Shown: one piece after another, positions 46-44,751 of the stretch
Layout: each line of letters begins with the position of its first letter
Position numbering within the stretch: position 1 is the first letter of the stretch
Program-made: the position numbers and the translations under genes
The notes under the pieces: generated by a model
Told to the model about the DNA's origin: nothing
The model's input: the letters and a program-made list of their open reading frames with translations, nothing else
The model's database searches: none
Assembly (NCBI RefSeq): GCF_040938485.1
Contig: NW_027270987.1
Span: 1,302,001 to 1,366,000, forward strand
Direction: 5' to 3'
DNA from: Diadema antillarum
Lineage: Eukaryota
DNA length: 64,000 nucleotides

Positions 46-3000
46 TCAGATTCCGCCAAAACCAATGACCTTCATATTCTGGAACTCGTTCAGTCCATAT
101 TTCGACCCTTCCACGCCGAGACCAGACTCCTTGACTCCCCCGAACGGTAGGGCGTTGTCGAAGATGAAGGTGTCGTTGACACCGACCATGCCGACTTCCA
201 TCCGCTCGGCTACCCGCCAGATCTGGCCGATGTCGTTGGAGTAGAAGTAGCCCGCCAGTCCCATCCGCGTGCTGTTGGCGATGGTGACCGCTTCTTCCTC
301 GGTTTTGAACCTGCGTGAGAGGGGTAACCATGGCAACAAAACATCATCTTGAAAGATACATGTACATTGTTGACAGCTACACAGTGCTCTATTCGTAACT
401 ATTTATTTGCCATGGTGCAATATCTGAGTACCAACTTTGATTCATACAAATATTTCTTAACGTTAAATGTTATTGCGTTATCCAAATAAGTATATACTAA
501 TATGATTACGAGCTGCTTTCTAAAATACGGACATTGACAATGAAAAAAGCAACTTCCCAATAGTTTCACAATTTTCGCTGCAATGGGAGGCATTCATTTG
601 TCTGTAACTATCGATTAGGTCATTTAAAGTGGTTTAGCTAAAATGGAGTTGAAGTGGGGGAGAAAACACATGAATTAATGGGTAGTCCTAATGATAATAA
701 ATGATAAGAAACCGGTTTACTGAAATAAGTTAGAAAGGGCTAATAATGTGTGGAGGACGAAAGATGAGAGGTGGGTTGAGATTTCTGCCAAGTGGGTTTA
801 GCTGGAAAGAAAATGAAGTTTAAGACCATGTGCTTTGTGGCCTCTACAATATTTGCCAACAGAGCAATACAAAGAAGTAGTACAAAAGGGAGTCTGTACT
901 TATCAGAAGAAACTTTATATTTCTTATGTCATTTTTTTCTTTTCACATATATTTCAAAATCCTTAAAAGATATATTTTCTGCTTTAGTCTTTCAGCCCAA
1001 TTGTCCTTCTTATTCACAGCGGAAGAAAGATAACCCAAAAGTATTTGAAACACGGCAGTTCCAAACGCCTCTTATACGATAGGTTTACTCTCGTCAACTT
1101 TACGAGACTGCTAACTGTCAATTGGTTTAAATTTGTGAATTTGGTTTAAATTGATTTAAATTCGTGACGGACGCAGAGCATCTCTGTGACGTCACTCACT
1201 TGATGATGGAAGCAAGAGGACCAAAAGTCTCCTCAGAGCAGACGAGCGCCTCCTTCGGAATGTCGCAGACGACTGTCGGCTCGAAGAAATTCCCGCCGAG
1301 TTCCGATCGCTTGCCTCCCACCAAAAGTCTCCCGCCACTCTTCACGGCATTTTGAACGTGGCGCTCAACCTTAAAAGAACAATCAAGGGGATAATCTTTT
1401 TATTTTTGGCGCACACAACGTCATTTACACTACACAAACCAGCGCTGCAGAAAGCTTGAGGCTGCAAGGTTGACTCTGGTGCATAAAAAGTCAAATAAAA
1501 ACATATACTTCCAGCAGTACAACTCTGAAGTCGGACTTTAATTGAAACAAGTAGCAGTACTGTCTCATCCAAGCAAAACAGTTCAAACGCTTACGAATGG
1601 CTTCATTCCCTAGCTAAGTCCATTGAGCAGTTCAGTCGGTTAATTTGCAGATACCGACAGTGCTCAGTCATTACAGTGCAAACAGTGAAAAAAAACCCCG
1701 GGCCAACTGGTATGCTGGAGAACACAGACTTACTACCAACAGGAAAGCAGTACATTTGTGTTGTCATGGAGACTATCTGGCCTCCATTCTGTGATCCATT
1801 AATACCTTTTCCAGTCCCTTTGCGTTGATCAGGGGGCCCAGTGTGGTCTTTGGATCCATGCCGTTGCCCACGACGAGACTTGAAGTAAGCTTGGCCAACT
1901 TTTGACAGAACTCATCGTAGATCCCTTCCTGGACCAGGATCCTGTTGGCGCTGATGCAGACCTGGGTGTAGCAACAAGCCAAGGTTGGTTTTAATGCCAT
2001 GTTGACGTAACTATCAGAAAGGAGACACCCCGATTTACCTACCCGTGTCTATTAACTCCTTATAAATTTTTGTCAAAGATAAGACAATTTCCATGATGAT
2101 ACACACAACAGCAAATAAAGAAGCGTTCTAATCAGTTGTTCATTCGTAATTGGTTGCAATTATTACTTTTATGTAGCTTTGTTACTTTGCCATACGTACA
2201 AAGGTCTTATCAATGTGATGAAGTCACCCTTTTGTAGAAGAGTACACAAGTCACTTTCCCCTTTTGAAGTTGAAAAACAAATGATATTCCGATATATTAT
2301 GATGCCCTGTCCTTGGAAAATATTCATGATGACATGGTCCTGAGACATTACAGAAAGTTTGCCATTGCCCGTCTAGTTCCTTATTCGACTATAATTAATC
2401 TAAATAATATGCATACTGTCCCTCCTTGAAACACAATCCAGCATGTCCAGAGTGTTACAACCCAGCCCTGAAGTTGACACCTTTTAGCCAAGTCTCAATC
2501 CGAGTTTGCCGATGAATATATCCCTTACTTCAGATCTGTGACTGTCTGTTTTCGTCCTAGTTTACAATGTTAATTTCTCAAACACCCATTCATGTTACCG
2601 TAGATAATCATTTGAATCCAATGGTTCCTGACGTCGTTTTCAGTTGATGTAAATGGAAGAACGTTCAGTAAAGGGTACTGATAGAATCCAGTGCGAAATA
2701 TCGGAATGACCACGCAAACCAGCGATGTTTGAAGGGAAATTTAACGAAAATCTCCTCTCACACTACTTCTCCTTATTTTGCTCTGAATATATGTATAGTC
2801 CATCTACACTCACCTGGCCTGATCCGTAAAATTTGAGTATGAAACAACCCATAGAGGCCGCATCGACATTGGCCGAGTCAAAGACGATGAAGGGCGAGTT
2901 TCCCCCGAGCTCCATAGATACCTTCTTCACTGTGCTAGCCGACTGAGCCAGGAGAATCTACAGCAAACAAATATAGGCCTATATATTATAGTCACGTCAT

Positions 3001-6000
3001 AACCGGCAAGGTCATATTTAGGTACGAGCAATGCCATATGTTTTAAATGCTGTCATTTTGTTCTTATTCTCCAACAATTGTGTTTCCTTCACATTTTGAA
3101 GCCATACAGAAACACACAAAGAAAATGCATTCTCTGACCGAGTAGGCTCCCTAGATTTCAGATTTACCAGTAGACCTACGCTAGTTGTATATAGAACATG
3201 GCTGACGCCACGTTTTCTAAAGAGGGTGGGGGGGGGGGGGGAGGACCAGTTTATATTTTCTGGTGCTACTTCCGGGTTTCATCAGCTAACAAACAATGTT
3301 TTATCGGCTCTGCTGATATAACTTACATTAACCACATTCTATGTTTTTACTTGTGCCACTTCCGAGGTTATAAAAGAAAAGTGGTTATACCCTATATGTT
3401 TTCCAATGCATTCTGCAAAAAAAAAAAAAAAAAAAAAAAACCGTTCCGCTGGTTGAAGTAACTGCCAACGTGTAAAAACTTATCGAGAAATCAACTCTAA
3501 GACCTCTTTCAGCATCCTGTTTGAATAGCTGCTGTATGATACTACATGAGACGTGATTGATATTTTCACACATTGATAAAGAATAAGTTAAAGAGCCTAG
3601 ATGTACATAGTGCAATTGGAGGATGTGAGCTAAAAACTGGTGCGCATCATACCCACCTTGCCCGTGGCTGTCGATCCAGTGAAAGAGATCTTGGACACGA
3701 GCTCGCTCTCGCACAGCACCTTGCCGACAGCCGGAGCGTTGGCGCGAGAACATGGCACGACGTTGAAGACACCGTCTGGGATGCCAGCCTCCTTCATCAT
3801 CTGAGATTGAATAAACAATAGGGTGATGGGGGGGGGGGGGGGATAAAATCGTTAACAAAGGTCCCTGAGGCGTCGAACTATACTGATTATATCCCCAATA
3901 CTGCCTTATTGAGAGCTATTGAAATGCATCAAGTTCATTAATCGCAAAAGCAATTGCTAGATTTTATTGTTATTAACATTATCATGATTAACATCATGTT
4001 TATCACTATTTATTCCATTATCACAATTTAAGTTTTTCTTCGTCATAGATCCTTTTTTTTTTTGGGAGTGGGGGAGGCTAACTAAGGTCCCTGCGGCGTA
4101 GAACTAATGATTATGTTTCCAATATTTCATTAAGAATTATTGAAACTATTGAAAAGTTTATCTATCGCAAAGACAATTGTTAGATTTCATTGTTGTTGTG
4201 AGCATTGTCATGATTAACATAATGTCTGTTTATCACTACATTGTATTCTATTATCGTAGTTTGAGTTTTTCTTCATCAGTGACCCTTTTTTGACATGATA
4301 ATGATACTACGATGCTTATAGCGCATATCACTACTGTAGAATCTCTTTACGCTTTACAGGATAAGGTTGAAAATGGAAAATTATAATAAGAGTAGTAAAT
4401 GATCATAAATGATCATTATCATGGGGAGAAGAATTCCACCAATCACTGGTCGAGATATACTTATCAACATCTTTACCATCATTTTCATTATCATTATGAA
4501 CATCAATGCTACTACTATCACCATGATCACTATCATATCGCTATGCGTGAGTGTAGTCGTAGGCCTCGTGATCACGCTTTAGAAATAGTTTTGTTAACAT
4601 ACAATATTGCCAAGAAAACTATCTCGCATCTGTTGCACCAGGCGGATCATAAATACCTTTAAAGCCTTAATTAGGCCTACTATTGAATTCTCTCTTCTTT
4701 GCTTTTCCTTAGCCGTAGAGATTTTCAATACAGCAAATATTTCCGATCTTCTCGTATGAACCTATTATGGTGTTTTCCAAAAATCAAAGAGGACAATTTT
4801 GTTTCTTGGGGGGCATTTCATCAACGAGTTCGTCGGAAATTTTCACCGACAAATTTGCTATCAACCAATCAGACGCAAGAATTTCAGTAGCTTTTAACAG
4901 TTGTCAGTGTAAATCACTGACAAGAAGTTTCATGAAACGGTCCCCTGGTCGTGTCATAAAACCGGACTTACGTCACAAAGGGCAAGAGCTGAAAGGGGCG
5001 TGTCCTCTGAGGGTTTGATGACGACAGTACATCCCGCGGCCAGCGCCGCTCCAGCCTTCCTCGTGATCATCTCCATTGGGAAGTTCCACTGGAATTCACC
5101 ATGACAGTCAGAGTAATCATCTAGTAAATGTTATCAATCTCTGTCGCCAGAGGGCTTACTTTAAAAACACTTCACAGCCAAGAATACACCCATTATAGTT
5201 AATGTTAAAGGACAAGTTCACTTTCTCAAACATGTGGGTTGAGCGAATGCAGCAATATTAGTAGAACACATCATTGAAAGTTTTGGGGAAATCCCACGAT
5301 CTGTTATGAAGTTATGAATTTTTAAAGTGTCTGCGCAATCACTGCTGGATGAGAAGACTACTACAGTGTATGATGTCAGATGCGTACAACGATATAAGGA
5401 AAATAAAACGAGAATTTCACAAAACTTTACTTTTTGAATAAAGTGGAAATTTCTTCAACTTGTTACTGACATATGTTAAGGGTAATATTATTCCCTCTGC
5501 CTCCTAAAAGAGAGAAGTGAAGTGACCATCTGTTATGCGAGAAAATTGAAAGCATGTTGAATTTTCTTTATACTTTCTTTATATCGTTGTACACATGTGA
5601 CATCACAAGCTATAGTAGTCTTCTCATTCAGCCGTGACAGAGCAGAAACTTTAAGAATTCATAACTTTTGAACAGATTGTCCGATTTTCCTCAAACTCTC
5701 ACTGATGTGTTCTACTAATATTGCTGCATTCACTCAATCCACATGTCTATGAAGGAGAACTTGTCCTTTAATGTTACAGTGTATGACTGTTTCTTCCCTG
5801 AGCCTGTGTTGAATGTGCAACGAAATACATGTACTACATTCCAACAGGTAAATCACATATCACGCTGAAGTGTTGATAAAGATTGTGATTTTCACCAGAG
5901 CCTATGTGTGAAACGTCCAGTCTTGGCAGCTTAGCACTAAAGTAGAACTAAAGGATTTCGGAGTAATTTTAGATGATGAGGGCTATGTAACAAACAAACA

Positions 6001-8904
6001 TCACCTCTCAGTATACTATATGAACAGCACATCACGATCCATTGTTACAGTACTCATACACGGAATTTATGGTTAGTCTGTTTATTTTTCATCGATTTCG
6101 CGAAACCTCCGTTCTAGAATCTGTGAGCAGTGTCATAATCCGATTTTAAAATGAAAACAAATATATTATGACGAGTATCAGACTTTTGACAGTATAGCTT
6201 CTGGCATTAAATGACTCTAATGATTTGTCAAGCGCCATTTTGGTAATATCTCTATTTTGGCATCTGGCAACATTAATCCAGAGGGTACTCACAGGGGTGA
6301 TAAGACCAGCCACGCCCACTGGCTGTCGAATCACCAGGGCCCGTTTATTCTTCTGCAGGTTGGTATGGACGTCCCCGACAGTGCGCGTTGCTTCCTCCGC
6401 GAAGTACTTGACGAAACCGGAAGCACCCCTAGCTTCATTGGTCGATTCCATCATCTTCTTGCCCTAACAAGAGAACAGAAATGTGTGGCGGTAAACATCT
6501 TGTGTTTTCAAAGCGCTAATATGGGTGGAATTACAATTATTGTTCTTTTTGAAATAAGTTACAATCGCTAGCAATTGAGACACTTCTGAGCTCTTCCACG
6601 AGTTTCTCAAAATGACCCCCAAAGTTTAGACATGCTCTCTTTGAGGACCCTTTCTTCTCATTCTTTTCCTGAAAGTCCACCTTCTTAGCAGCCTCAAGTT
6701 AAAACTCCACAGAATAATATTATGTTTGGGAGTTCTACTTTTTCAAGATCCAAAGTGAGTTTTCGTATGGTACATTCGTACAAGTGTCTCTCTGTATGGT
6801 CGTTTACTAAGCTAGTATGGCATCCAATGCACTTAGCCACCACAGTTCATTCCCATGCACACCATCTTAAGAATTGCATGTTTCATGTCTAAGTTATTGC
6901 AGAGTATTCGCTCATGCCATCCTTCTTTGCTAAGATAATGATTTAAATCAAAAGAGTGTTACCTAATTTTACTTTCTCTCTCAATCATGTTAAAACTACG
7001 GCCAATCCGGAGTCTACAGCAACATTTATATTTACACTATCAGCACTTTTAATCCGTATACATGCACTGCTCAGTAATTTAGATTAAGTATAGGAATGAC
7101 GCTTATGTTTACAGAGCAACCAATTTGTGAAATATCATTCTGTTGCTCTTCCAAGGTATTACTATGGCGTTCTGGGCTGGTAAGCAGGATATGGAGCAAT
7201 TACTAGAAAAGAAAATATATATATAAATCTCGGTTTAACATCTGATCAACAATTTCTCATTTGTTTCAGAGTGTGCGGGGTAGAGAATTCACTTCTAAAT
7301 GGTGTGTAACGTTTTTAATCAATTTTTCCTCTGATCGTGATCAAGATTGATCGACTTGCTTCATTATACAGTCATAAAACTCAGCGTATAAATTATCATT
7401 GTATTTCCGTTAACAGTATATATTTTTCTTTATTACGATGTTTATCTATCTTGCATCACGCTGTATAATATAATATGTTAAAGTTTTGCTGTAATTGTGT
7501 TTTGTTGGAAATGAATTCAAATGAAATAAAATGAGTGAAAAAAGGTGAAAACTGTGTAATGCAAAGATTTAATGTGACGGTCCCTGACAAATGTTTATCA
7601 AAATGGATAATAAAGATATGAGAGTGTATATGATATCATACGTGATTAAATTCCCACCAAATAAAGATAGATTTGCAAATGGTACAACCGAAAATAAAAT
7701 TTATCCCTCCACGGATTTGATAACATAGGATAATTGAAAGTGATAATGCAAAAAAAAAGAAAAAAGAATGACGTCCAGATGTTATCCAGTATGCAACGTT
7801 AGTAATTTACGAAGAATATTAACTTAATACAGAGTTTCAATGTCCATACCGCGCCCATTTTTTCTTTAAATGATCCTGTATTACCAGATTTTAGACCCCA
7901 AACCTATGAAATGCTGACATCGAAGAACTTCGGCCTTTATAATGCTATAGAATGCAGGTAAGAATATATCACTGTATATAGTTCCAACAATTCAGTGGAA
8001 TCACTGCGTGAAGAACCACCCTCCCCCTTCAAAAAAAAAAAGTTTACCTACTTGCACTTCAACTTTGGACTTTACCAGGGAGGTGGAAAGCTCCTATCTT
8101 CGCAAGACCCATAAAGTATACACACAAGGCATACATGTTAACAATATACACTAAAAATTGTATAGGAACCACATGAGAGCATCGCGTCTGACCTCAACTG
8201 CCCGTTCCACGTTCACCAAACAAGAGGCGGTGAAAACCTCACCAATTTATTAACAATGTCACGTGACTGCAATCGTTCCGCCTTCAAAATTGTTAACTCA
8301 TCCCAGAATCCTGTCCTCTGTGAACTTACATTTTCAACAGTAATAATCTTTGCGAGGTTTTCGACATTTTCATCCATCAGTTGGCCGAGACGCTTTAAAA
8401 TGGCCGCCCTCTCCTGCATCGTACAAACAAAACACAAAGGAAGACAAAACAAAATATGACAAGCAAACAATGAACATATTGAACACATCCTGTAATGGTA
8501 CAGGTGGTGGTCAATTCACTCCATGATACAGTGTGCGATACGACCAGCAATTAGATGGTGATATAGAGGTTGGTATAATATATTGCTTGAGTACTTGACC
8601 ATTGCATATCTTTATAAAGATCTTGAATTGCTCAATAATGATAAACGACATCAACTTAAAGACCCTTCGTATTTTGAAAAAGCCGTCAGTATGTGACATC
8701 TGTTAAATATTCTATGCAAGTCTTTGAATGATACACCTGTGCATAACATATTGAAGACCTAGCATACACGATTTTAAACAATACAGATAGACCTGATCAT
8801 GCATTTCAGCGTTAGCCGTGGAAACATGGGGACATAATGACATGAATCATGCTTATAGTGCCATGTCTAATAAACAGCAGTAGACGGGACTTTATCACAC
8901 ATTG

Positions 8905-8939
<35 letters not shown>

Positions 8940-10574
8940 GCATACACAGTAGATGCACACACAAAATCTATATGAATGCCATTGTACATGAAACGCTCAA
9001 TACGATAATGTGATAAAGGAGCTCATGGGCTCCAATGCCAGGATGCACCCTCGACCTTTCCGTACACACTTCCAGGAGAATGTCAACATTATACACTTGT
9101 ACTTACTATGCAAAATAAACACCACGACCTGGCTGCTTTCCCAACGAAGAGTCAACATTTCATCGTGACTTGACGAAATTAGTACTACTAGTATTACCTA
9201 GCAAAATCGTGGAACAATATTTGTTGTGTTTGACCGTTCATTGGTCAATATCTCGTACGATTCGATGAAGGTCAAGACCAATGGAGGACATGCAGATTAA
9301 TAATTGTTTGGGGAGTCTTTTGTTTTGCATAGAATTTGTCGTATGAAGCCAGGCGTGTTCCTTCTAGTAACCTACGCATGAATAGGCCTACGTGTACCTC
9401 CCGAACAGATTTATTTCGATAAAAACTCGCCGCTGCAACTCTGTTAATAATACACATAACATAATTAGGATCAAGTTCCACCTTTTGCAATCGTTATCTT
9501 GCCATATTCCTTTATAGCATCTGTGTGTGTGCGTGTGTGTGTGTGATGTGTGTGTGTGCATTCTTTTCAGACCCAAGTGCTAAAACGAACACACAAACAT
9601 TGGCTACACTATGAAACTAAAATGGCGCTTTAACGTATAATAAATGGACATGGCGTCTAACTTCGAATCAGGTCAAAGGAAGGTGTGGAAACGTCGGATC
9701 TCGCGGATTAACACAGGTCGAAATGTTTTCAATTTGGTATCACTGTAATGTTTTCTAGATGTCTCACTTTTTGACCTTGTTTTGCGAGAGATAACATTTT
9801 GCCATCTGATGATATACAGAATCTGACAGACACATACAAACATTATCGTATGTGGAGTCGTCGACCCGTAAATGAGAAGTGGACAAACGAGTTTTAGGAA
9901 CAGTATTCAGGACTGCACTCGAAAGTATAGTTTCATAACTACGGAGCAAGACTGGAGTGATGAAAAGGGTGTGGTGTGTACACTGACAAAGAAGTGCGTT
10001 GTCAGAGTGAACAAAACATTAGAAATAAGTAGTTAATGTTATCAACGGACTAACCCTGAAATTTAATCGGTATATGAGTGACCAAGAGTACAGTAACGAG
10101 CGATGTCAGGAATGACACCTGAAGTAGTTTCTATATAACGTATCCGTAAGACTGGAGCAATAATCAAAGGTGTAGCATCTGTTCTGAATAAAAAATGTTT
10201 GACATTTAGACTGATTCCTGAACTTTTTTTAAGGGGGAAATTTGGGAGCGGTGATTTCGGTGCACAAGTCATAGTTTGGAATCATAGAAACTGACCCCAA
10301 GGAGTGAGTTTCGAGGGAGCAAGATTCGAGTAGGCCTATAATGTGCGAGAGTTGCATATAAACCAACCTTCGAAGTGGTTTCCCTCCAAGTTTGGAAGGC
10401 TGTGTACGCCCTTTGGATGGCCGCCTCGGTGTCCGCGGCATCGGTGTCGGCCACGTTGGCGACCACCTCTCCCGAGGCGGGGTTGAGCACCTCGAAGGTC
10501 TTTCCCGACTTCGCCGAAACCCACTCTCCGCCAATGAACGCCTTCTCGCGAATAAGAGGATTCTTGTCCGCCAT
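46..10574 (-). CDS. ALDH5A1-like: SSADH-like aldehyde dehydrogenase, paralog B (9 coding exons, 485 aa, no mitochondrial presequence)
   Basis: Exons assembled by hand, all GT-AG: 10574-10368, 8413-8330, 6463-6293, 5088-4972, 3800-3657, 2957-2814, 1961-1806, 1369-1200, 310-46 (TGA 46-48). The frame stays open across all junctions. ALDH motifs: WNFP, KPSEDTP, FTGST, SMELGG (catalytic Glu), GQVC (catalytic Cys), [15 protein letters not shown]. Confidence 0.95.
3854..4290. repeat. Diverged tandem duplication of a ~225-bp unit in intron 4 of paralog B
   Basis: Units at ~3854 (aaggtccctgaggcgtcgaacta...gtttttcttcgtcat) and ~4080 (aaggtccctgcggcgtagaacta...gtttttcttcatcag) align end to end with many substitutions. 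Confidence 0.8.
5209..5767. mobile_element. Non-autonomous Kolobok-type MITE
   Basis: Perfect 11-bp TIR AGGACAAGTTC/GAACTTGTCCT flanked by TTAA at 5205-5208 and 5768-5771; no ORF. Confidence 0.85.
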
Positions 10575-22804: not shown

Positions 22805-24575
22805 TCACACACCGCCGAAGCAGGCATACTTGATCTCCATGTATTCGTCGATGCCGTACTTGGATCCCTCGCGCCCCATTCCCGACTCCTTGATCCCGCC
22901 AAAGGCCGACACGTCGGAGGAGATGAGGCCCTCGTTGATCCCGACCATGCCAACTTCCATCCGCTCGGCGACCCGCCAGATTTGGCCGATGTCGTTGGAG
23001 TAGAAGTAGCCCGCCAGTCCGACGCGCGCGCTGTTCGCGATTGTCAGCGCCTCCTCTTCCGTCCGGAATCTTGGGGAAAAAACAACAACAAAACTAAACA
23101 TGAAACAAATAACAACGTGATAAAAGGGTAGAAGTTTAAAGGGTACCGAACAGACAGATTCCCCTTCCTGTTGACATTGCCTTTGACTGAGTTAAAGGTG
23201 AAAACACCTTGAAAATTAATTTGTGTATGTATAAGAAGCAGAAAAAAAACCCCTGAAGAAATACAGTGCTACGTTTGAGGACATTCGGATCAAACCTGAG
23301 AAAATTATGATTTTTTTTTTTGTCGTTGTTGTTACGACAAATCAAAAATAAACTGCAATTCTGTGATGTCACACGCATGCTCACGCCATTGGCGCTGCAT
23401 TACAAAATGATAAAAAAAAAGAATTTCCCTGAAGCAAATCCCCATCATACAGGCACCCTTGAAACAAATACTATATTACATATGACATAATAATTCGGTA
23501 CAGTGCTAATGCATCCAACTTGGCACCTTCACACCCTCAAGTTGAAAAAACACATTGCCAACAAACCTAACACATGAACTTGATTTCTCATCAGTTAATA
23601 GTTGAATTAATTCATATATCTAAATTACTAATTTGAATAAAGCCACAACCAGTAATGCTACTCTCGCTCTTAGATCTTATGAAGAATTGGCCTTGGGTGC
23701 ACCACTTCCGGATCAAACTAGCCTTACAAACTAGTCTGGATTCCAGACCGTCGGGTTGTACTAATTTCCTTCCCAGAATATTAACGCCCTCTAACGATAA
23801 AAGAAATGGCAGGTTCAGCTGGATGGTTCTGTAGACAGTCTTCGGCAAAGGCAGCTGCGAGTAGAGCGCATTTGTGAAAGGAGTACAGTTGGCAAAGGGT
23901 CTGGTAACCGCCTGAATAATGTGATAAACAAATGATACTACAGGCAAAACTTGGGTGAAAGATCCAAAATGACCCAAATAAAAGGATAATTTCTGGAAAA
24001 TATTGTTTTTATCAATTACCTCTAGTACATCTAGATGTTTGATGACTGTCACATGAAAAAAAAAAGACCATTTCACAACCATTCACAACCCTTCATAATT
24101 TGGTCTTTCAGTAAACGATAGCCACGAAAACCCTATCTCACTCACTTATTCATTTGTTAACTGAAATGAAATGAACAGAAAAACATGCAAAATCTGACTG
24201 ACAAGATTGTTAGCTTAGGTTTGACATGGCAACCAGCAATATCAGTCATACCTAAGTTATTAAGTATTCGCAACAAAATTTTAGGAAAAGTCACCGAATT
24301 AGGTTTAAATTGATTCAAAGGCGCAAGAGTGGCAAATGGAGATAGGGGAAACAATGTGCCCCTGGGATTTATAGGGTTACAGGTCAAAAGCAAATTAAAG
24401 TTATTAAACGTTATTAAGCAGAGTGGTTTCTTTGACATTACATAACACACTTCCTAACCAGAACGGATTTAAGCAAGATTGTTGACTCAAATAGAAGTTA
24501 GTGAGATCATCCCCACTCCCATAAAAAAACGACAAAGAAACAATCAAACGAAATAAAACACTCCCCTCCCCTCCA

Positions 24576-24624
<49 letters not shown>

Positions 24625-27600
24625 TGGAAGGGGGACTGGAACGCTTGGGATTAATGTTCAAGGAAATCCAAACTATCATCACTATGTCTATTTAATCATG
24701 ACTTTATTCAAGTTGAAGGCAATGTGAGTAGAACATTTACAAAAACCAGGTCCACCGTTTTTTCAATACGAAGTGCAGGTTTAAGTTTTTAGAGTTACGA
24801 AATAACTGTTGAAGGTTACATTACCACAACAAAAGATACATTATCATGCATATGATACTTTCGAATATCAATCAGTTATCTCAATCTTCACTATCTTAAT
24901 TTTTACGTGACCCTGTGCCCCAAAATCCCCACAATCACCAACTAATGATAAATACATAAATCCATCTCTACGACTATAAACCATTATTTCAGAATATACA
25001 GAAACACAAACACAAAATTCTACATTGTTCGGCTATCGCCTTTACCCATGGCCCACTCTTTCTCAATAAAATCACTATCGATCTACACTCAGTTAAAAAA
25101 AAAATACATGTAATTAAAACCTTTACCACCAAAACACATTTAAAACAAAATACAAACAATTACCTTGTGTTCGCAAGGCAAAAGATATAAACTCAACTTT
25201 CCAGACGTATTATTTATCCATTTAACACCCTGTGACCTTGTGACCCGAGATTCCCTCCCCTTTCCATCAGAAACGAAACTTAATCAATGTAGTGTACTAC
25301 GTATACGCCTTAAACCTGCGGCTAATACTAAAATTTAAAAAGAAAAATCTATTTCAATACATATCTCAAACAATATTCTGAAATCACCGCATAAAAACGG
25401 TTACGGATAGACATGCATATTGCCTCCGGTGACACTTCGTCGCGAAAACATAATGGGTGTGAATATCAGCTTGTGAAGCCCTACGGATCTAGGTACCGTA
25501 CCTCCCTAAAAGCTTTCTCTTTTCTGGCTTAGAATATCGTAAAGAGGAAGGTATGGCGAGTTTAGAAAGTATCTGAAAGAAATCATTTGGACGAATTTTG
25601 GAATTTGCTGTTTTCAGAATTGTTACCCGGAATAATGAGTCCCCTTGCCCAGATTTCTAACGCATAGAATGACACGGAGTAACTCTTATCCTGGGTGTCC
25701 CGCACGATTGAACTATACTTTTCTACTTTCCTTTGATGTGCATCCTCGAGGTTGGTTTCAATGGGGACAGTTAACTCAACAATCGTGATTTTTTTTTTCT
25801 TCTTCCCACAAAATAAGTAAATCTGGGCGAAAACTTGTGGTGGGAATATGTGCAGGTACGGTGCCCCCGGCAATTGAATGTCCTTTTAAATCAGTGTAGG
25901 TGTAGACGTTCCCATTGAACAGATTTTCAAGAAATGTTTTGTGTATGTACCTCAGTAAATCATTATGTCGCCACTCATATCTAAAAGAGAGGAAGAAATA
26001 TGGGCAATTTGAGAGTATAATGATGCAAAGTACCTGTGGTGCCCAGAAAAAAACAAACACATTTATCACTAATAAATAATAAAATATACGATAGTGACGT
26101 GACCATTGTGACTCTCTTTCAATAGCGGAGTTGTTGCTATCATTAAATATATTTATTTATTTCAGAATGGCTTGATCAGTATCAGCTGCTTTTCATTATT
26201 GAATGCAATAAACTTGTATCACACCAGTGGCAAGGAATTCCAGGTCAGCTGCAGTAACAATTTGAAAAAAAAGGAAAAAAATCGACAGTATAACAAATAT
26301 CAAAACAACAAATAAAAATCGTGTCTCTGACTCTATACACTCTTTTAACGAAAGGAAATACAAAGGATTACAAAAAAATCTCGAGTTGATATTAAAGTAC
26401 ACATGCGCAAGAAAGCAGCCATACGTCACTTTTTTCTCTTTTTTTTTAGACAGTTGGGGGGGGGGGGGGCTAGTGGCAAAAGTACGCAAGATGGGGGGAG
26501 GGGGAGGGGTAATCACGGAGAGCTTCGATGGCATACTGGACTATCTTTATATCCGTTTACAGAGTTGACTGAGTTGAGTTGACTGATGCATTTGCAGCAC
26601 ACACACACATCCGTTGATTTTTACGTCGCCGTGTTGATCACAAAGCTGGCACTGGTCCCGAGGAGCGTCTATTGGCATCACTCTGATCTACATCATTTTC
26701 AACGGGATCATTCTGGGTAGTGTCATTGCGAAGGGTCGATGCACTGGTCTTGTCATTAGCCGTTTGAAACCCTCGAGCTATGAAAATGACGGCGATCATT
26801 CCAATGCTTTAGGTGTAAGTACACTTACGGTCTCCGAGATGGAAATCTCCGTCTTGCACAGCCCGTCAGGTTCAACTTTGTGGGCAGTTTGGATGAGGAC
26901 AAGAGCATACATGATTCTCCAGTTTGTTATCCCTTTCGTAGTTTGTATGTGAAGGCTCCAGCCCGGTACTTCGTGGACTACTCAGTACGTTTGTATCTAT
27001 TGGTCCTTACACCAGCTGCCAGCCATAGATTGGACTGATGCGTTAGGTGACGAACATACTAAACTCCGGGCAATAACAGCAAAGACGATCAAACAGAGTT
27101 GCATATCTCATAAGGCTCTCCAACAATGTCCCTGAAAAGCAGACTAGATAGAGTACGTATCAAAATCACACACGTGATATATTCAGGCTCTGCAAAATTT
27201 GCATGTAAAACGAAGTACGGGAATATAAAAGTTTCAGCGACATTTCTCCGTCCGTACAAACCACGGTCAAAACTGTCTTAAAACAAGAGTAATTCTTGCC
27301 TATGAAAGAATCACAGACAATGACGAACTAGGACTGACTACAGTCCACCGATGCACAGGTACTTGACGTTCATATACTCCAGCATGCCGAACTTGGCCCC
27401 CTCCTGTCCTCGCCCGGACTCTTTAAAGCCCCCAAATGTGGCGCCCTCGGTTGAGATGAGGGGCTCATTAACCGCCATCATGCCGAACTCGAGCCGCTTG
27501 GTTAGACGCCACACCTGCCCAATGTCTCCAGTGTAAACGTAGCTCGCGAGGCCGTATCGGACGCTGTTGGCTATAGCAATCGACCCTAATCCTAATCCTA

Positions 27601-30600
27601 ACCCTAACCATCAAACCCTAACCCTAACCCTAACCCTAATCCTAACCCCAACCCTAACCCTAACCCTAACCTCCTCCTCGTCCTAAAATCTGAGCGGGGA
27701 AGTGGACTTTGCGTCTTACTATCCCATGATTCCGTACGATATCACTTTGCTGTGCCACTTCGGCCGCACAATACAGCAACTTTGACATTTTCGATTACGA
27801 CACTGCGACTGATGGTGAATCATAACTTGTTTTCAAGGACATTACACCGCAGTCTATTGCGGATTTTGATATGAAAATCTGTGAAATTTTACACATATAC
27901 GGTAATCATACTGTAACAGACCAGTTATGTTAATCTCTGCAACTAAGCAATGTACAATTTGAATTGGCAATAGTGCCTTACTTGAGTCTAGTTTTGAGAC
28001 TAATCTTGTGAGTCTGAGAGGTGTGGATGAAAGCTAGCATGTCTTAGCTCAAAGGTTCCAGAAGTTTCAACAAAGTTGTGGAGAAACAAGAGGCCTGAAC
28101 TTGGTGAGAAACCTGGGTTACAATGCCTGGACTATGAAAATGACAACTTTGTTATTATATAGTTGTACAATAAGTGACAAGTGTGAGTTTGAAGCATGAT
28201 TTGTCAAGTTGTGTAAAGAAAGGTTGTAGTCAGTGCTGCTGAGGGCAGCTGCATTACGCAGAGTTACTGCATAAGCTAAGGTATGGTACCGATGGTGCAG
28301 ATAAATGTGTGTGTTATACCTGGCAAACTAGAGAGTAACTTGTCACAATGCTATGTCATATATGAAGAATACTGGTTGGCTTCATGATATTAGAGGGAGC
28401 TTGTGTGATTACTTTTGGGTGACACAGTAATGTATGCTCCAATGCAGGCAAGCCGTTCATGTTTATGCATAGTGTTTCCATTGGAAGTTTGATGCTATGC
28501 AAGTATAAATAGTCACGGTGTAATCACTGAAACTTTGAAAGGTGACTGATTATAGGTGATAAGTGATCCGGAGTGATTGTGTAGTAAGAAATAAGGGAGA
28601 TGAAGGAAGACAGGGTATGCTGTTTCATTCCTTTCCCTAGGAATAAGGTTGTAGTTTTATGGCATAGGTTGCAGTGTGAGTGAGAATGCCATATTTCAAG
28701 AGTCACTTCATGCTGTGTTCATAGTTTAATGAGAATGATGGAAATAGAAGGTATGACAAGTATCCTGTATGAGGTACACCATACGATGGAAACGGTATTA
28801 GCTTTACCATTCAGGCATTGAATGATGGTACGTCATAGCACTCTACATGGGGTATAAGGTAGCCTTAGATACATGGTATCGATCCATCACCCAGAGAGAT
28901 GATGAACTAGTTGTATCTAGGTGTAGTGGTGCAGTGTACTAAAATTCAAGAAGTATGCTGTATCGGCTATAACATACACCTATGTTACTGTAGCATCAAT
29001 GTGTTGTATATTCTTCTCTATGGAGAGTGTGCCAGATGGGATATGTTACCATGCTCGCTGGAATGTATAATACGGATGACACTGGCTAGGTGTTTGATAG
29101 GAGTTATCTGTTATGACAAATAGAGTCTGTGACTCAAATTATAGTGCCGTTAGGTACAACAAGACACTAAGACATTCATGTTATTTTTATGTAATGTTGA
29201 TACTACAGAGTTCAAGTTCACTGAGTGGCTTGGAAGTCACTGCACGGAGTCGAGTCTCGAGAGAGCTCAAGAGGGGTGAGTTGTAGTAGGGCAGTGATAA
29301 GCATATAGGCTAGCAAGCTCAACACTGCTTAATTTGTACATAGGTTGTTGTTGAAAGGAAACTTGTTTCAGGAAGTTTTTGGTCAGTTGAAATGTGCTTT
29401 GTTTAATACATTTCAGAGTTGATGTTGTACGATACAGTATATTGGTGTTGATAGTCCTACAAGCCTGTTTGCTGACAAGGTAATATCATTAAATTTGTGC
29501 TGTTTGTAGTACATATAGCAGGCTGTGAGTTATTTTGCATATTATGAAAGCAGATGTTGGGACATATACACTGAGTCCAAAACAATACAAAGCAAAATAA
29601 ACAACAAAAAAAGGGGGGGGGGGCAACTATATGCATGTGGTTGAAATAAATCAGAAGGGAGTACATTGTATATTGTGAACTTAAAGAATAAAGATGATTA
29701 TCAGTGTAGATAATCTTCAGTGACAATGGTATAAAATCATATTTGTACAATGGTGTATGGTAATGAAAACGATATGGATGGAAAATCATAAAACGTGATA
29801 TTGATGCTTCCATTACAGTTCACATGGATTGGAATGCTGAAAAGCATGAATGAACAAAACTTAAGCATCAGTTGTGAAGTATGTTACAACAATATGCAGT
29901 TTGTAGGTATGTTACATGGCCATTGTGTAAGTCATGGTTTGTTCTTTGTTGTTGTTGTTCTTTTCAGGGTTAAGCCACCCTCAATTAAAGTCTGCCACTA
30001 TACTGAACAAATGATGGAGTCCAGTGTCATTTGTCTCAAACCTGCTGTGTTACAATACAATTTATACTATACACTGACAAACAAACAAACAAACAGACAA
30101 ACACATAGGATTGACAATGTTTTACGGATTTCTAACACGGCAAGGCATCTTGTCGAGTAAGGAGAATGCGATCCGCTGCAAACCGATTCTTTTTTTCTTT
30201 TTAAAGTGCCACTATATTAAGTCATTCATTTTAGTTGTTCAAGGTTTCTTCGAGTGACGTTTAAAAGCTCTTGAAAAAAAATCTTGGAAAGGAAATATAT
30301 ATTAGAATTTCATTTTTTTGGCACTTTTAATCTGAAAGCTATTTCAGTTATTTCTTATTTTAAACGAAATAACCATCCGTGTTCAAAATTATGTATTGAT
30401 TTGAGACTTAATCTGCATTCACATAGCATTATACTTTGTATTGTCCACTGAATTGTGGCGGTGAATGATAATAAGAAAAATCGCCTACTAGACTATACTG
30501 TACGTGTGTAATAGAGCCTAGAACTACAAATTATGAGTACGTTCCTGCTCTCGGCATTTAATCAGTGTTTCGCAGAGAGATTGGTACATGGGACATGGGG

Positions 30601-33600
30601 CGGGGGGGGGGGGGGGGGGGAGGGGTTCCAATGAGCTAGTCATGAAGGGTATCTGACTTATCAACCAACACTTACTTTATGATCGGGGCCAGAGGTCCGA
30701 AGGTTTCTTCTCGACAGACGAGGGCGTCATTCGGAACATCGCGAATAACGGTGGGCTGGAAGTACGACCCGCCAAGGGCGTGTCTCTGGCCTCCCACCAG
30801 GACCTTGCCGCCACGAGCCACGGCATCGTCCACATGCTTCTCCACCTGTAGACATCAGAGAGAGAAATGACGGCAGGTATTGTTTGTTTGTTCATTTTCC
30901 ATCTGAGAAGATGGTTGGATAACCAATATTCAGCTACGATAAGCTGGTCTCGCATGGGCTCCAGTTGATGTGAGGCGGAACACTTCACCGGGTTAAACAC
31001 GCTGCTCTTTACGATCTGAATGAATGAAGCGGAATCTTTTACGTGCATGAGATGTGGCTCTCTCACACACGGGACCTTCATTTTATGTCCTATCCGAGGG
31101 ACAGAGTGTTTTGCCTCTTGCTAGAGGGGGACGGTATCATTACACACAACATTGCTCAGTCCAGACTCGGGTTCGAACCCGGGTCGCTTGGGTCTGAGGC
31201 AGACGCGCTACCGACTGAGCCAACTCACCACACTAAAGTTTATAACAGGGACTCACTGTTAGCTCCAGTGAGTTTCGACAAAAATCATGAAAATAGTAAA
31301 TAAATCAAAGAGTCAGCAAAATAATGCAGGAAGAAGCAAAGTTGGAGTAACACTTAGCTATAACGAACTGTGTCGTACAGTAGTACGATCAAAATGTAAT
31401 GTCTGGCTTTGATTTCAATGGACTGAAATTAACTAACGTTTCAGCCAGTTGATTGCATTCGAGTATTATAATGATAGAAATGGCGAAAGGATGACATTTT
31501 GAAATTAGCGTGATACACACGCTGTCATTCAAGATAGACTTTGGAGAAGCTCTTGAATTTAATGTGCGAGGAGCGACCAGTGAAAGAAAGGGAAAACAAT
31601 TCCAACAAACTAACAAACTAACAAACACATAATCTTGCGACTACACAATGTCGTATTCGAAGCAGTTATACATACTTTCCTAAATTTCTATGGTTATTTG
31701 CTGTAATTGAATGCTCTGCTGTTCGCATTGACTTCTGAGCGTTCTGTATCAGCTTTCCGATCCACACAGGGGCCTATAAGGAAGATCGTATCATTAATGC
31801 CCAGGGTCATGGCTGTGAGATTACTCAGTACTTTTCAACATGGTATGGCAGCATAGATTTACAAACAGAAAGAGGAAGCTCTGAAAGAGGAAATTACTCA
31901 ACAATGTGATATCGGAAAGTCTAGAAAGTTCACTGATCGGCGCACAAAAGTTATATACATGTGTGGATGGGTTTCGAAATGCTTTCTCACTATCAGCGAA
32001 ATAAAAATCCTAAAAACCTATTGAGATATCAACAAGTCTTCGCAAAACTCTATACTTCACAGCTGGAGTGTAAAGCAACATGTTTCACTGGTTTTGATTG
32101 GATATAGTACTTAGAGACAATCATATAGACTTCTGTAGGCTAGTCTTGATCTTTTCCTCTTCTTTNNNNNNNNNNNNNNNNNNNNNNNNNNNNNNNNNNN
32201 NNNNNNNNNNNNNNNNNNNNNNNNNNNNNNNNNNNNNNNNNNNNNNNNNNNNNNNNNNNNNNNNNNNNNNNNNNNNNNNNNNNNNNNNNNNNNNNNNNNN
32301 NNAACTGAATACTCACGAACATGTTTGGCGTATGCTTGCACATGTCACATATCACCCTTTCCCCCCTCCCCCTCCCCCTTCCCCTCCCCCCCCCCCCCCC
32401 CCCCAATGACGTTTCACGTGAATATACCCTCTGCTCCCTCATCGTGCAAGTACTACATTGATAGAGCTTGGATCAAAGGCTAGCACCCACCTTCTCCATA
32501 CCACTGACGTTGATGAGCGGTCCCTGGGTGGTGGCCGGGTCCATCCCGTCGCCTACTACCATCTTCTCCACCTCGGCGCTCAGTTTCTGGCAGTACTCGT
32601 CGTACACTTTCTCGTGCACCAAGATTCGATTAGCGCAGACACAAGTCTGACCGAAACAAAACAACAACACACACAAACAAAAGGGGAAAAGGTCAAATTC
32701 ATTCTGGAAGTGTTGCATGTACTGTAGCCAGTTATCAATGTAAAACTTCCACACTATCCCTCATGAATGATTCCAAATGCTGACAATCTCAAGTACACGA
32801 AAGTAACTGTTAACTGCTAAATATGTTAATTGATAAATCGGTTAACCGCTATCCACAATGACAATTCTGGAAAGCTCACAACTCGTTAATATTTCACGCA
32901 TCACAAATAGGTCACACACGTTTCACATCACTATGATATTTTCACAAATTTTTGCGTCTTAATCCAATGCTGCCAAAACACGACGGTTTCTGTTTCTTGA
33001 TGTTTTCTTCTTTATAATTCCTTTGCTATTGGCAACATCTTAGGTATATAATATCAATATGACGTATAGATGTTGTGCCGCTGACAAGGGAAACGTCTTA
33101 ATTTGCGAAATTAAATCAATACCAAATTTAGACAAAGAGCAGCAAACTGTTTTTCTTAAGAATAATAACAGACGGTCGAGTTGATCATACTCAGTACCTG
33201 GCCCGATCCGCGGAATTTGCAAACGAGCGTGCCCGCCACGGCAGCATCCACGTTCGCTGTTTCGAAGACAATGAAGGGGGCGTTGCCGCCGAGCTCCATG
33301 GAAACGCGTTTGACCGTGTCTGCAGCTTGCTTCAGGAGAATCTGGGGGCACGCACCCAGAGAGTGTGTGGAAGACAGTGAGTAACATACACGAAAATATA
33401 GAAACTAATACACACATAATTAGATAATGCACATGAAATACGTACCAATACACAAGAAATGTCGGATGTTTAATATCACGGCTGTTTTCCGGGCTTCCGG
33501 GCAATCAATAGGTTATCAATCATGCACTTAATAATCACAAACAAATTAAACACTTCCACCGACATTTCATAGATATTCATAGCATTTATGATACATCGTC

Positions 33601-42600: not shown

Positions 42601-44751
42601 GTTTTACAAATCAAAGATGACCACAGTAGCTATGATTATACAAACAAAGAAATAAAAGATCTTTTTATTAAACCGAGTAAGTGTACATTGATAAGAAAAT
42701 ATAGAGAATTTCAATTTATGATGTTACATGGCGTAGTTTACACTAAGGAGCGTTTAATGAAGTTTGGTTTTGTAACAGACAGCCTTTGTTCCTTCTGCCA
42801 ACATGAGCCTGAAACTTATCTGCATTTATTTTTACACTGTGTTAAAGTGAAACCGTTATGGGAATTCATAATTAATTATTTTGATATAAATGAGTTAAGG
42901 AATATGAATTGGAGAGATATATTTGGGGGAATTTCTGGTTATTCAAATAGATCAAAATGTGTAAATACTTTGATTATCTTAACAAAATACATCATTTTTA
43001 AATCTAGAACGGGAAATAAGTTACCCACTGGAGAAAAGATGCAAAAGATTATTGTTGAATTAATAAATGAGGAAAAAATCCTTGCGACCAAGGCTGGGAA
43101 GCTACATGTACATTTACAAAAATGGGAATATTTTGAGACTTCGTTGAATAAACCAGTCTGAAGCTACGTGCAACGTCTGTGACTTTTAAGAAAATAGTAA
43201 TGTTTCCATAGTATTCCACTCTTTCTTTTCTTCATTTTTTTCCCTTTCCTTCATTCCTCCTCCTCTTCTTCTTCTTCTTTTTTTTTTTCTTATGTTGTTT
43301 TGTATTTTCTCCCCCTCCTTTCCCATGCGTTCCTGTCAGCCTGTTGGCGGGCTGATTATATAACTATATTTACTATATTGTGATGTGTAGGCAAGAGCAG
43401 TTAACCAAATTAGGTGCATGTGTATGTGTGTGTGTATGGGTGTGTTTGTGTGTGTTTGTGTGTTGCATGTGTACAGATAGGGGTGGGGGAGGAAACAGGA
43501 AGGGAGGGAACTGGTGGGGGTGGTCATAGGGACTCAGTAAGGGATATGAGTTAGTAGGTGGGCGGGTATTGGTTGATAAATAATATGGTTCCATTATTTA
43601 TTACTGTATAATTTTGCTGCATAATTCATTTGGATGATTATTAAGATTAATGCTAGAAGAATTGAATTATCACTGTTAAATTCAAGCAATTTTTTGAGAG
43701 CATAGGGGAAGTGACTGTATGTAAATTGATAATTGTTCATGAAAATGTAATTTTTGTTATGTCATTATGTACAGCAATAGCAAATTTGCTATTATGATCA
43801 CAAATGTATATTTTCGTCATTTCAATTGTAGCAAATGAAAATTGTTATTTTTTTCTATTACTTTGAATGGAACAGAATAAACATCGTTGAAAAACAAAAA
43901 AAAAAGTATTATGTTTGTGTGCATGTGGGCGTGTGGTTGACTTTATGGAGTTTGACGACCAATTTCAGACAGAAAGAGACGGCGATAGAGAGAGTGGTAG
44001 AGAACAAAAAGAGAGAGCTACAGAGATACAAAGAAGGGAAAGAAAAGGATTACCAACATCGTGCTTTCACGAGTCCTTTCTCCAGTTTCAAAGTACAATC
44101 ATGAATGATGTGATCAAGAGCACAAAGAACAGCTTCAGGGGGGTGTTTCATCAAAATCCTTGGTTTTGATTGGCTGAGAAGCTCTGGTCACTGCCTGTTA
44201 CTATGGTGATTGTCAGCGATGACAACTTGTCAGCGCTGACAAAAGTTGATGAAACACCCCCAGGTCAACAAGAATTACTAAACATAATGAATATTGCATG
44301 AAGTGATCCATGGTTTGGGGGTCGAAATTTTTGTGCACAAAGTACGCATAAAATCTGAATACATTACAGAACCGGCCTTTAAAGAGAAAAGCCAAATAGA
44401 AAGGAAATGCACTCAATAAGCAAGGTTAAAAATGAATAACGTACATATTATTATGCAATATATGCATATTGAATATATGAGTTGATTCCATAAATAAATG
44501 CAGTAAACATTCCTTTTTTCGACTCCAAAGGGACCAAAGAAAACTCTTCGGCTTACGTGAATGTCGACTTACACGACAGAATTAACATAATTGTTCTATA
44601 GTTATCTATCGGGGGGCAGATTTTTTTTTTTCTTCGACGTATCCAATTTTTCGAGATGTGCAAGCTCGATGTAGGCGAGGTTGACTGTATCTATCTATTC
44701 AATATCCCCACATATCGATTTGTCTATATCTATATATGTGTATGTGCGTGC

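What the first reader, a model, noticed from the sequence alone, without database searches (positions are those of the whole stretch)
46..10574. Paralog B looks like a neofunctionalised ALDH5 with a re-charged substrate pocket
Seen: catalytic Glu (SMELGG) and Cys (GQVC), NAD-binding motifs and the whole frame are intact. Two of the three residues that bind the succinate-semialdehyde carboxylate in human SSADH are replaced: R334->Y (KFYGSGQ, codon 2828-2826) and S498->F (codon 162-160); R213 is kept. Acidic residues appear nearby (A209->E at 5073-5071, S499->D). Paralog A keeps all three residues. Inference: an active enzyme for a different, possibly neutral or amino-, aldehyde, i.e. a new activity arising in a family that is normally single-copy in animals.
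Basis: partly seen in the sequence, partly recalled or inferred. Interest (0 to 1): 0.85.

Follow-up and report, generated by a model that had tools for sequence, protein, structure and literature searches.

The report
Diverged ALDH5 paralog, rebuilt substrate pocket
Next to an ordinary mitochondrial succinic-semialdehyde dehydrogenase gene lies an old, intact copy under purifying selection that keeps the catalytic machinery but has lost most of the succinic-semialdehyde-binding residues and the mitochondrial leader, so it probably oxidises a different aldehyde in the cytosol.

Summary
Paralog B (46-10574, minus strand) is an intact 9-exon, 485-aa ALDH5-type gene with GT-AG at every intron. 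Mapped on human SSADH (PDB 2W8N), R213 is kept. The changes are R334Y, S498F, S499D, A209E and S208M, plus C342S (redox-switch Cys), T338V and R514V. N205, E306, C340, K214 and E515 are intact.

Paralog A (22805-47543) has identical exon sizes, all canonical residues and an Arg/Ser-rich leader of about 80 aa. B has no leader.

- **Age:** A and B are sisters (100/99 support). dS is saturated, and B's branch is 2.3 times longer.
- **Where B changed:** at positions where A matches the SSADH consensus, B changed 15 of 33 in four pocket segments and 24 of 186 elsewhere (p = 5e-5).
- **Selection:** in a related species' contigs, 9 of 10 listed exonic differences are synonymous. Exon divergence is about 2.6%, against about 9% in the flanking intron.
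- **Relatives:** two metagenome fragments are B-type. One keeps Tyr334. The other keeps Val514 and also lacks the Ser498 motif.

So B is a functional enzyme with changed specificity, not a decaying copy. Its substrate and its transcription remain untested, because no RNA run was listed. This is a new variant of a known kind, of moderate interest. The scan's only other notes on this locus are on this same window.

The parts
46..10574 (-). Paralog B: complete ALDH5-derived gene. It has 9 exons (10574-10368, 8413-8330, 6463-6293, 5088-4972, 3800-3657, 2957-2814, 1961-1806, 1369-1200, 310-46), encodes 485 aa, and its stop codon is at 48-46.
   Evidence: open frame, GT-AG at all 8 introns. Each exon hits human SSADH or TIGR01780 best, except the 28-aa exon 2 (no family hit) and exon 1 (several ALDH families score alike).
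10368..10574 (-). Exon 1. The ATG is at 10574-10572 in a good Kozak context (acaagATGG), and an in-frame stop lies 4 codons upstream. No mitochondrial presequence is encoded.
   Evidence: Nothing in the window downstream of A resembles A's leader.
6293..6463 (-). Exon 3: the long helix at the mouth of the substrate pocket. It is the most diverged exon (49% identity to A). Residues invariant in SSADHs are replaced here: P->K, Y->G and W->Y.
   Evidence: The helix runs 103-124 in the model of homolog P0107. The corresponding helix 106-121 forms the pocket mouth in RlGabD.
5059..5088 (-). Motif [11 protein letters not shown]: N205 (5085-5083), S208M (5076-5074), A209E (5073-5071), R213 kept (5061-5059), followed by K214.
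   Evidence: Residues 209 and 213 are i and i+4 in helix 160-174 of the homolog model.
2910..2912 (-). Catalytic Glu306 codon, in the motif SMELGG.
2826..2828 (-). R334->Tyr codon, in the motif KFYGSGQ.
   Evidence: Arg is invariant in 21 and in 122 SSADHs. Tyr is also present in B-type fragment P0387.
1950..1961 (-). Motif V-C-I-S: T338V, catalytic C340 kept (1958-1956), and C342S (1952-1950), which removes the redox-switch partner.
   Evidence: The role of C342 is described.
151..180 (-). Pocket loop [10 protein letters not shown], replacing NEGLISSVEC of human SSADH. S498F is at 162-160 and S499D at 159-157.
   Evidence: The loop is also remodelled, and 1 aa longer, in B-type fragment P0151.
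112..114 (-). R514->Val, next to the kept E515 (motif GLGVEGS). The change is shared with P0151.
182..261 (-). Near-identical tract shared with paralog A's terminal exon, read as recent gene conversion. It ends directly 5' of the divergent pocket-loop codons.
   Evidence: about 3 mismatches in the tract, while the rest of the CDS has third-position identity of 0.33-0.44.
22805..47543 (-). Paralog A, the comparator: a canonical ALDH5/SSADH of 565 aa. Exons 2-9 have the same sizes as in B. Exon 1 encodes an Arg/Ser-rich leader of about 80 aa. An N run at 32166-32302 lies in intron 7 and was left untouched.

Best explanation
Paralog B is a functional, probably cytosolic, NAD-dependent aldehyde dehydrogenase. 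It descends from an old tandem duplication of the animal's SSADH (ALDH5) gene.

What it keeps (shown):
- The reaction chemistry: oxyanion-hole Asn205, general base Glu306, nucleophile Cys340, the Lys214-Glu515 dyad, and the motifs KPSED, GSTATGK, EETFGP and PFGG.

What it has lost or rebuilt (shown):
- The carboxylate clamp that makes the enzyme specific for succinic semialdehyde. Arg334 is Tyr and Ser498 is Phe.
- The helix and loop that form the pocket mouth.
- The Cys342 redox switch.
- The mitochondrial leader.

Inferred:
- The remaining Arg213 now has a Glu one helical turn away (A209E, i/i+4). This Glu could neutralise it.
- Positions 213, 334 and 498 are the three classical specificity positions of the ALDH fold (ALDH2 W177, F296, F459). 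B has therefore reverted two of them to the aromatic state typical of enzymes for neutral or cationic aldehydes.
- The enzyme no longer prefers succinic semialdehyde. It acts on an uncharged aldehyde (aliphatic or aromatic) or an amino/onium aldehyde outside the mitochondrion. Which one is unknown.
For: - Intact 9-exon gene with canonical splice sites.
- Residue mapping on human SSADH.
- R213, R334 and S498 bind the SSA carboxylate. K214 and E515 are needed for catalysis. The C342A variant is still active (PMC11681614; bioRxiv 2023.03.13.532361).
- A and B are sisters at 100/99 support, with branch lengths 0.20 and 0.47.
- Tajima relative-rate test: B has 55-62 unique changes and A has 30 with three of the six outgroups (p = 0.0009-0.007) and 48 vs 30 with a fourth (p = 0.04). 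With the other two the excess is small and not significant.
- Pocket enrichment: 15/33 against 24/186 conserved positions changed in B (Fisher p = 5e-5). The mirror count for A is 1/19 against 15/177.
- In 140 columns invariant in 21 diverse SSADHs, B alone changes 14, nine of them radically. A alone changes 6, all conservative.
- Purifying selection: contigs of a related species cover exons 4-9. Nine of the 10 listed exonic differences are synonymous and none of the listed indels is exonic. Exon 7 differs at 4 of 156 positions, and the adjoining intron at about 16 of 169.
- B-type fragments from other organisms. P0387 matches B at 40/48 and A at 30/48, and has KYYGAGQ. P0151 is 79% identical to B and 62% to A, has GLGVEGS, and its loop lacks the Ser motif.
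- Residues 209 and 213 lie in one helix in the AF2 model of homolog P0107.
- No leader: an in-frame stop lies upstream of the ATG, whereas A's N-terminus has 10 Arg and 0 Glu in 79 aa.
Against: - No transcript evidence. No RNA run was listed, and the two small runs of the same species showed no exon coverage.
- No activity data.
- Arg213, the one clamp residue conserved in all SSADH families, is retained, so some SSA activity cannot be excluded.
- The dN/dS estimate rests on 10 differences from a truncated list.
- I fixed the pocket segments after seeing the clusters, although they match published pocket elements.
- Full-length B could not be modelled or searched, because a spliced protein has no reference in these tools.
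- An upstream leader exon spliced to the AG just before the ATG is unlikely (weak polypyrimidine tract) but not excluded.
- The two B-type fragments are single exons from short metagenome contigs of unknown organisms.
Confidence: 0.62

Rival explanations
1. B is still a succinic-semialdehyde dehydrogenase, as an extra-mitochondrial isoform. It would bind the carboxylate with Arg213 alone or with other residues, as the non-ALDH5 bacterial SSADHs do without Arg334.
For: - Arg213 and Lys214 are kept.
- Arg334 and Cys342 are dispensable in the 'other SSADH' family.
- Each exon still matches SSADH models best, apart from exon 2 (no hit) and exon 1.
Against: - Ser498, which is conserved in all SSADH families, is also lost.
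- A Glu now sits one turn from Arg213.
- The pocket-mouth helix and loop are rebuilt.
- Without a leader the enzyme would be separated from mitochondrial SSA production. That GABA transaminase is mitochondrial is stated in the preprint.
Confidence: 0.15
2. B is an unexpressed or recently silenced duplicate that only looks intact, and its pocket changes reflect relaxed constraint.
For: - No RNA evidence.
- B evolves faster than A.
- The locus contains a dead third terminal exon, so copies do decay here.
Against: - dS between A and B is saturated, yet B has no stop, frameshift or broken splice site.
- Nine of 10 listed differences to the relative are synonymous, and exons are about 3-4 times less diverged than the intron.
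- B-type fragments with open exons exist in other organisms.
- The changes are clustered, not spread evenly.
Confidence: 0.08
3. B is a non-catalytic ALDH-fold protein recruited for a structural or binding role, as ALDH-derived crystallins were.
For: - Several invariant SSADH residues are replaced radically.
- ALDH-derived crystallins in invertebrate eyes are a known precedent. This rests on my own knowledge and was not tested here.
Against: - All residues needed for chemistry and NAD binding are kept and conserved.
- P0387 also keeps the catalytic Glu.
Confidence: 0.05

Closest known systems
Human/animal ALDH5A1 (mitochondrial SSADH; PDB 2W8N-2W8R) and bacterial GabD-type ALDH5 enzymes
   Same: - Best hit for exons 4 and 9; for exon 6 two bacterial ALDH5-type enzymes score slightly higher.
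- About 53% identity to a vertebrate SSADH.
- Same catalytic residues and the same K214-E515 dyad.
- Same exon structure as the neighbouring canonical copy A.
   Different: - Lacks R334, S498, C342 and R514.
- Has Glu at 209.
- The pocket-mouth helix and loop are rebuilt.
- No mitochondrial leader.
GabD-like enzymes with shifted acidic substrates, such as sulfolactaldehyde dehydrogenase RlGabD/SlaB
   Same: They are ALDH5-type scaffolds re-used for another aldehyde, and specificity is set at the same positions (213 and 334) and by the 449-458 loop.
   Different: Those enzymes keep a cationic or polar pair (Arg/Arg or His/Asn) for an anionic substrate. B puts Tyr and Phe there and adds acidic residues, which argues against an anionic substrate.
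ALDH1/ALDH2-type and betaine/amino-aldehyde dehydrogenases (ALDH9/10)
   Same: They carry aromatic residues at the positions equivalent to 334 and 498 (ALDH2 F296 and F459; spinach BADH W285 at the 334 position). I mapped these by fixed spacing to the catalytic Cys and to PFGG, using my own knowledge of residue numbers. This agrees with the hit coordinates.
   Different: B is not related to them by descent: it is sister to A inside ALDH5. It keeps Arg at the W177-equivalent position, so it has no complete aromatic box.

Membership tests
ALDH superfamily (Pfam PF00171) | Aldedh fold with Asn-Glu-Cys catalytic residues and NAD-binding motifs | tested here: met
   WNFP, SMELGG, GQVC, GSTATGK, EETFGP and PFGG are all present. 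Exons 1 and 3-9 hit ALDH models, while the 28-aa exon 2 hits none. The related fragments carry PF00171.
ALDH5 family (by descent) | Groups with SSADH/GabD-type sequences and shows at least 40% identity to ALDH5A1 (the nomenclature rule is from my own knowledge) | tested here: met
   B is sister to canonical paralog A at 100/99 support, inside the eukaryotic SSADH group. It is 53% identical to a vertebrate SSADH and 64% to A. Human SSADH is the top PDB hit for exons 4 and 9 and third for exon 6.
ALDH5 family (signature residues) | Cys342, Lys214 and Arg334, which are conserved only in ALDH5 (PMC11681614) | tested here: not met
   Lys214 is kept, but Cys342 is Ser and Arg334 is Tyr.
Functional SSADH (EC 1.2.1.24/16) | Carboxylate clamp Arg213 + Ser498, conserved in all SSADHs, plus Arg334 in ALDH5 | tested here: not met
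   Only Arg213 remains, and S498 is Phe.
Functional SSADH (EC 1.2.1.24/16) | Whole-protein score above the TIGR01780 cut-off (646 bits) | tested here: inconclusive
   Only single exons could be scored. The sum for B is about 471 bits. For A, the seven exons scored sum to 476 bits; allowing for its two unscored exons I estimate about 580, also below the cut-off. Over those same seven exons B scores about 93 bits less than A.
Mitochondrial SSADH of animals | N-terminal mitochondrial targeting presequence | tested here: not met
   B starts MADKNPL with an in-frame stop upstream. A has an Arg/Ser-rich leader of about 80 aa. No targeting predictor was available.
Betaine/amino-aldehyde dehydrogenase type pocket | Aromatic box at the positions equivalent to ALDH2 F170, W177, F296 and F465, plus acidic entrance residues | tested here: inconclusive
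   B has Phe206, Tyr334, Phe498, Phe504 and acidic E209 and D499, but Arg at the W177-equivalent position. The mapping to BADH rests on my own knowledge.
Any enzyme activity | Measured aldehyde oxidation and substrate profile | not testable with these tools
   This needs the recombinant protein.

The most novel reading that the evidence does not exclude
B-type genes form an unrecognised animal ALDH5 subfamily found in marine invertebrates. In it an SSADH scaffold was converted into a cytosolic dehydrogenase for a cationic aldehyde (amino-, betaine- or sulfonium-type), using Tyr334 and Phe498 for cation-pi contacts and E209 and D499 as counter-charges. That would give these animals an ALDH5-derived route to an osmolyte or signalling metabolite.
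Probability: 0.12. Interest if true: 0.65.

Novelty: new variant of a known kind. Interest (0 to 1): 0.45.

Why it matters
SSADH is a textbook single-function enzyme of GABA catabolism. Its substrate clamp (R213, R334, S498) is used to interpret human disease variants. Here there is a natural, selected paralog lineage in which the chemistry is kept while the clamp, the redox switch and the mitochondrial address are removed. Its unmodified sister copy lies 12 kb away. Together they form a clean pair for studying how ALDH specificity is rewired. The paralog may also point to an unknown aldehyde-oxidising step in the cytosol of marine animals. It does not overturn any general idea, because duplication followed by pocket remodelling is the usual way the ALDH superfamily diversifies.

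Tried and rejected
1. **Full-length search with B.** A spliced protein has no reference and I did not type it, so several steps were left out: the full-length database search, the exact cluster look-up and structure prediction of B.
2. **Workaround with a template plus exon references in align_proteins.** MAFFT misplaced the short exons. The one usable alignment (A3) returned only relatives of the bacterial template, which wasted one search.
3. **Representative search with exon 9.** Clustering at 50% merges B with ordinary SSADHs. No hit has an SSADH-like loop with Phe at 498.
4. **JGI metagenome scan and ESM Atlas.** Both returned only bacterial or protist SSADHs.
5. **RNA evidence.** No RNA run was listed for 1-6000 or for exon 1. 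The small runs X11 and X12 of the same species covered only repeats and one intron piece.
6. **Summing TIGR01780 scores per exon as a membership test.** This does not discriminate, because A would also fall below the cut-off.
7. **Literature.** I found no paper on a divergent animal ALDH5 paralog. The coral tandem-duplication paper does not mention ALDH. Kim et al. 2009 is not held.
8. **Organism identity.** It stayed unknown. The sequence is from a non-vertebrate with TTAGGG repeats, and the nearest A-type and B-type fragments come from Tara marine metagenomes.
9. **Horizontal origin of B.** Rejected: B has the same intron positions and phases as A and is its sister in the tree.
Full report
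**What is there.** The minus strand of 46-10574 holds a complete nine-exon gene.
- The exons are 10574-10368, 8413-8330, 6463-6293, 5088-4972, 3800-3657, 2957-2814, 1961-1806, 1369-1200 and 310-46.
- Every intron is GT-AG, and only the last junction splits a codon.
- The CDS is 1458 nt and encodes 485 aa, with no internal stop.
- A second copy, paralog A, lies at 22805-47543 on the same strand. Its exons 2-9 have exactly the same sizes and phases (84, 171, 117, 144, 144, 156, 170, 265 nt).
- A's first exon is longer. It encodes about 80 extra N-terminal residues with 10 Arg, 1 Lys, 1 Asp and no Glu, which is typical of a mitochondrial presequence.
- B starts MADKNPL at a good Kozak site, with an in-frame stop four codons upstream.
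- The N run at 32166-32302 lies in an intron of A and was left alone.

**Check of the observation.** I aligned single exons to human SSADH chains, where 2w8n/2w8p chain number + 48 gives precursor number.
- Exon 4 reads [11 protein letters not shown] against [11 protein letters not shown]. This gives S208M and A209E, with N205, R213 and K214 kept.
- In exon 6, residue 44 (Tyr) pairs with chain 286, which is R334. SMELGG holds E306.
- In exon 9, residues 50 and 51 (Phe, Asp) pair with S498 and S499.
- Exon 7 begins VCISANR, so C340 is kept while T338 is Val and C342 is Ser.
- R514 is Val, next to the kept E515.
- Paralog A has the canonical residue at every one of these positions.
- PMC11681614 states that R213, R334 and S498 are essential for SSA binding. 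It adds that C340, E306, E515, R213 and S498 are conserved in all SSADHs, while C342, K214 and R334 are conserved in ALDH5 only.
- The same paper shows that K214 and E515 are needed for catalysis and that the C342A variant is active.

**Is it unusual?**
- In 122 full-length SSADHs, and in a more diverse set of 21, R334, S498, C342, T338 and R514 are invariant.
- Among the 267 C-terminal fragments held after the two exon-9 searches, the 498 position is Ser in 239 and Thr in 13.
- Of 140 columns invariant in the 21 diverse sequences, B alone changes 14. These include W->L, P->K, Y->G, W->Y, R->Y, T->V, C->S, S->F and R->V.
- A alone changes 6 of these columns, all conservatively (F->Y, A->T, L->I, P->A).

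**History.**
- A and B are 64% identical.
- Synonymous sites are saturated: NG86 dS is about 2.6 and third-position identity is 0.33-0.44. The exception is a near-identical tract of about 80 nt in the last exon (B 182-261), which I read as recent gene conversion. It stops just before the divergent pocket-loop codons.
- I built a tree with vertebrate, invertebrate, protist, fungal-like and bacterial SSADHs. A and B are sisters with 100/99 support, and B's branch is 2.3 times longer (0.47 against 0.20).
- Tajima relative-rate tests give 55-62 unique changes in B against 30 in A with three of the six outgroups (p = 0.0009-0.007) and 48 against 30 with a fourth (p = 0.04). With the other two the excess is not significant.
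- The duplication is therefore lineage-specific but old. Taxon sampling is thin, and the organism itself stayed unidentified. It is a non-vertebrate with TTAGGG repeats.

**Where B changed.** I considered positions where A agrees with the 90% consensus of the SSADH set.
- B differs at 15 of 33 such positions inside four pocket segments, and at 24 of 186 elsewhere (odds ratio 5.6, Fisher p = 5e-5).
- The four segments are the helix at B 99-114, the WNFP..RK segment at 155-165, the catalytic-loop segment at 283-294 and the loop at 444-453.
- The mirror count for A is 1 of 19 against 15 of 177.
- I fixed the segments after seeing the clusters, which is a weakness.
- They do coincide with published pocket elements. 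In RlGabD, helix 106-121 and loop 449-458 form the pocket mouth, and Arg171 and Arg289 (equivalent to R213 and R334) bind the anionic group.
- An AlphaFold model of the homolog P0107 (pLDDT 82.7) places residues equivalent to 209 and 213 in one helix (160-174), four residues apart. The new Glu209 could therefore pair with Arg213. The exon-3 cluster lies in the long helix 103-124.

**Is B alive?**
- No RNA run could be listed.
- DNA contigs of a related species ('organism B') laid on 1-6000 cover exons 4-9.
- Of the ten exonic differences listed, nine are synonymous and one is T315A. No listed indel is exonic.
- Exon 7 differs at 4 of 156 positions, and the adjoining intron at about 16 of 169.
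- For exons 6 and 7 this gives dN of about 0.004 and dS of about 0.10.
- The list is truncated to the best-supported rows, so the numbers are minimal counts. The filter does not depend on codon position.
- No difference was listed at the Tyr334 codon.

**Relatives elsewhere.**
- The exon-9 search found one B-type fragment, P0151, on a 718-bp Tara metagenome contig. It is 79% identical to B and 62% to A. It shares GLGVEGS and the C-terminal ..FQN.KV.GFG signature. Its pocket loop reads NDPSSPFGIDIP, one residue longer and again without the [LI]-I-S-[ST] motif.
- The exon-6 search found P0387, on a 680-bp metagenome contig. It matches B at 40 of 48 positions and A at 30 of 48. It has the same exon borders and KYYGAGQ, that is Tyr at 334, and it keeps the catalytic Glu.
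- B-type genes therefore exist in at least one other organism. Loss of Arg334 and Arg514 is shared among them, and the 494-503 loop is remodelled but variable.

**Mechanism proposed.**
- Shown: the chemistry residues are intact, the clamp is dismantled, the redox-switch Cys is gone, there is no leader, and the gene is under purifying selection.
- From established knowledge: positions 213, 334 and 498 correspond to ALDH2 W177, F296 and F459. The mapping uses fixed spacing to N169, C302 and the PFGG motif. These are the classical specificity positions.
- Inferred: B has shifted from an anion-binding pocket towards an aromatic one, with two extra acidic side chains (E209, D499). It would work in the cytosol on a non-anionic aldehyde.
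- The KPSED motif keeps the Glu that favours NAD over NADP. This last point rests on my own knowledge.

**Comparison and verdict.**
- By descent B belongs to ALDH5. By signature residues and clamp it is not a canonical SSADH.
- The nearest functional analogies are GabD-like enzymes that changed substrate at the same positions, such as sulfolactaldehyde dehydrogenase. Those stayed with anionic substrates.
- I found no paper describing such an animal paralog.
- I rate it a new variant of a known kind. It is of moderate interest, is directly testable, and has its canonical sister gene beside it as a control.

**Limits.**
- Full-length B could not be submitted to any search or fold tool, because it has no reference. 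Those steps were left out.
- Transcription, localisation and substrate are untested.
- The selection estimate is small-sample.

Noticed in passing
L084:4804-4923 and L084:5251-5379: An ALDH5 gene of another animal sits on a metagenome contig (also GCA_013332975.1 JAAUXT010147195.1). It carries two tandem versions of the exon homologous to window exon 4: YNYPFSMVTRM... and WNFPNAMITRK.... These may be mutually exclusive exons that would swap the pocket helix holding N205, R213 and K214.
   Followed up: no
window 27341-27583 (-), repeat at about 27584-27669: A relic third SSADH terminal exon lies in paralog A's last intron. It is 49-56% identical to B and A and keeps the Ser motif ([14 protein letters not shown]). 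Its 5' part is replaced by a (TTAGGG)n-like run. The locus has therefore had at least three copies.
   Followed up: partly
window 182-261 vs 22960-23039 region of paralog A: A near-identical tract of about 80 nt sits between otherwise dS-saturated paralogs, which I read as recent gene conversion. It ends directly before the divergent pocket-loop codons of B.
   Followed up: partly
window 3201-3400, 4801-5000, 5201-5800: B's introns contain very high-copy repeats. Summed contig depth in the relative's runs reaches 10^3 to 10^6, with many inverted joints around 5300-5720.
   Followed up: no
P0001 (representative protein, 200 aa): A single ORF holds two tandem copies of the ALDH C-terminal segment. 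Its origin is unknown.
   Followed up: no
L002:94-1593: A JGI metagenome contig holds an intron-less eukaryote-like SSADH of 500 aa with a leader-like N-terminus. It is 52% identical to B. I used it as an outgroup.
   Followed up: partly
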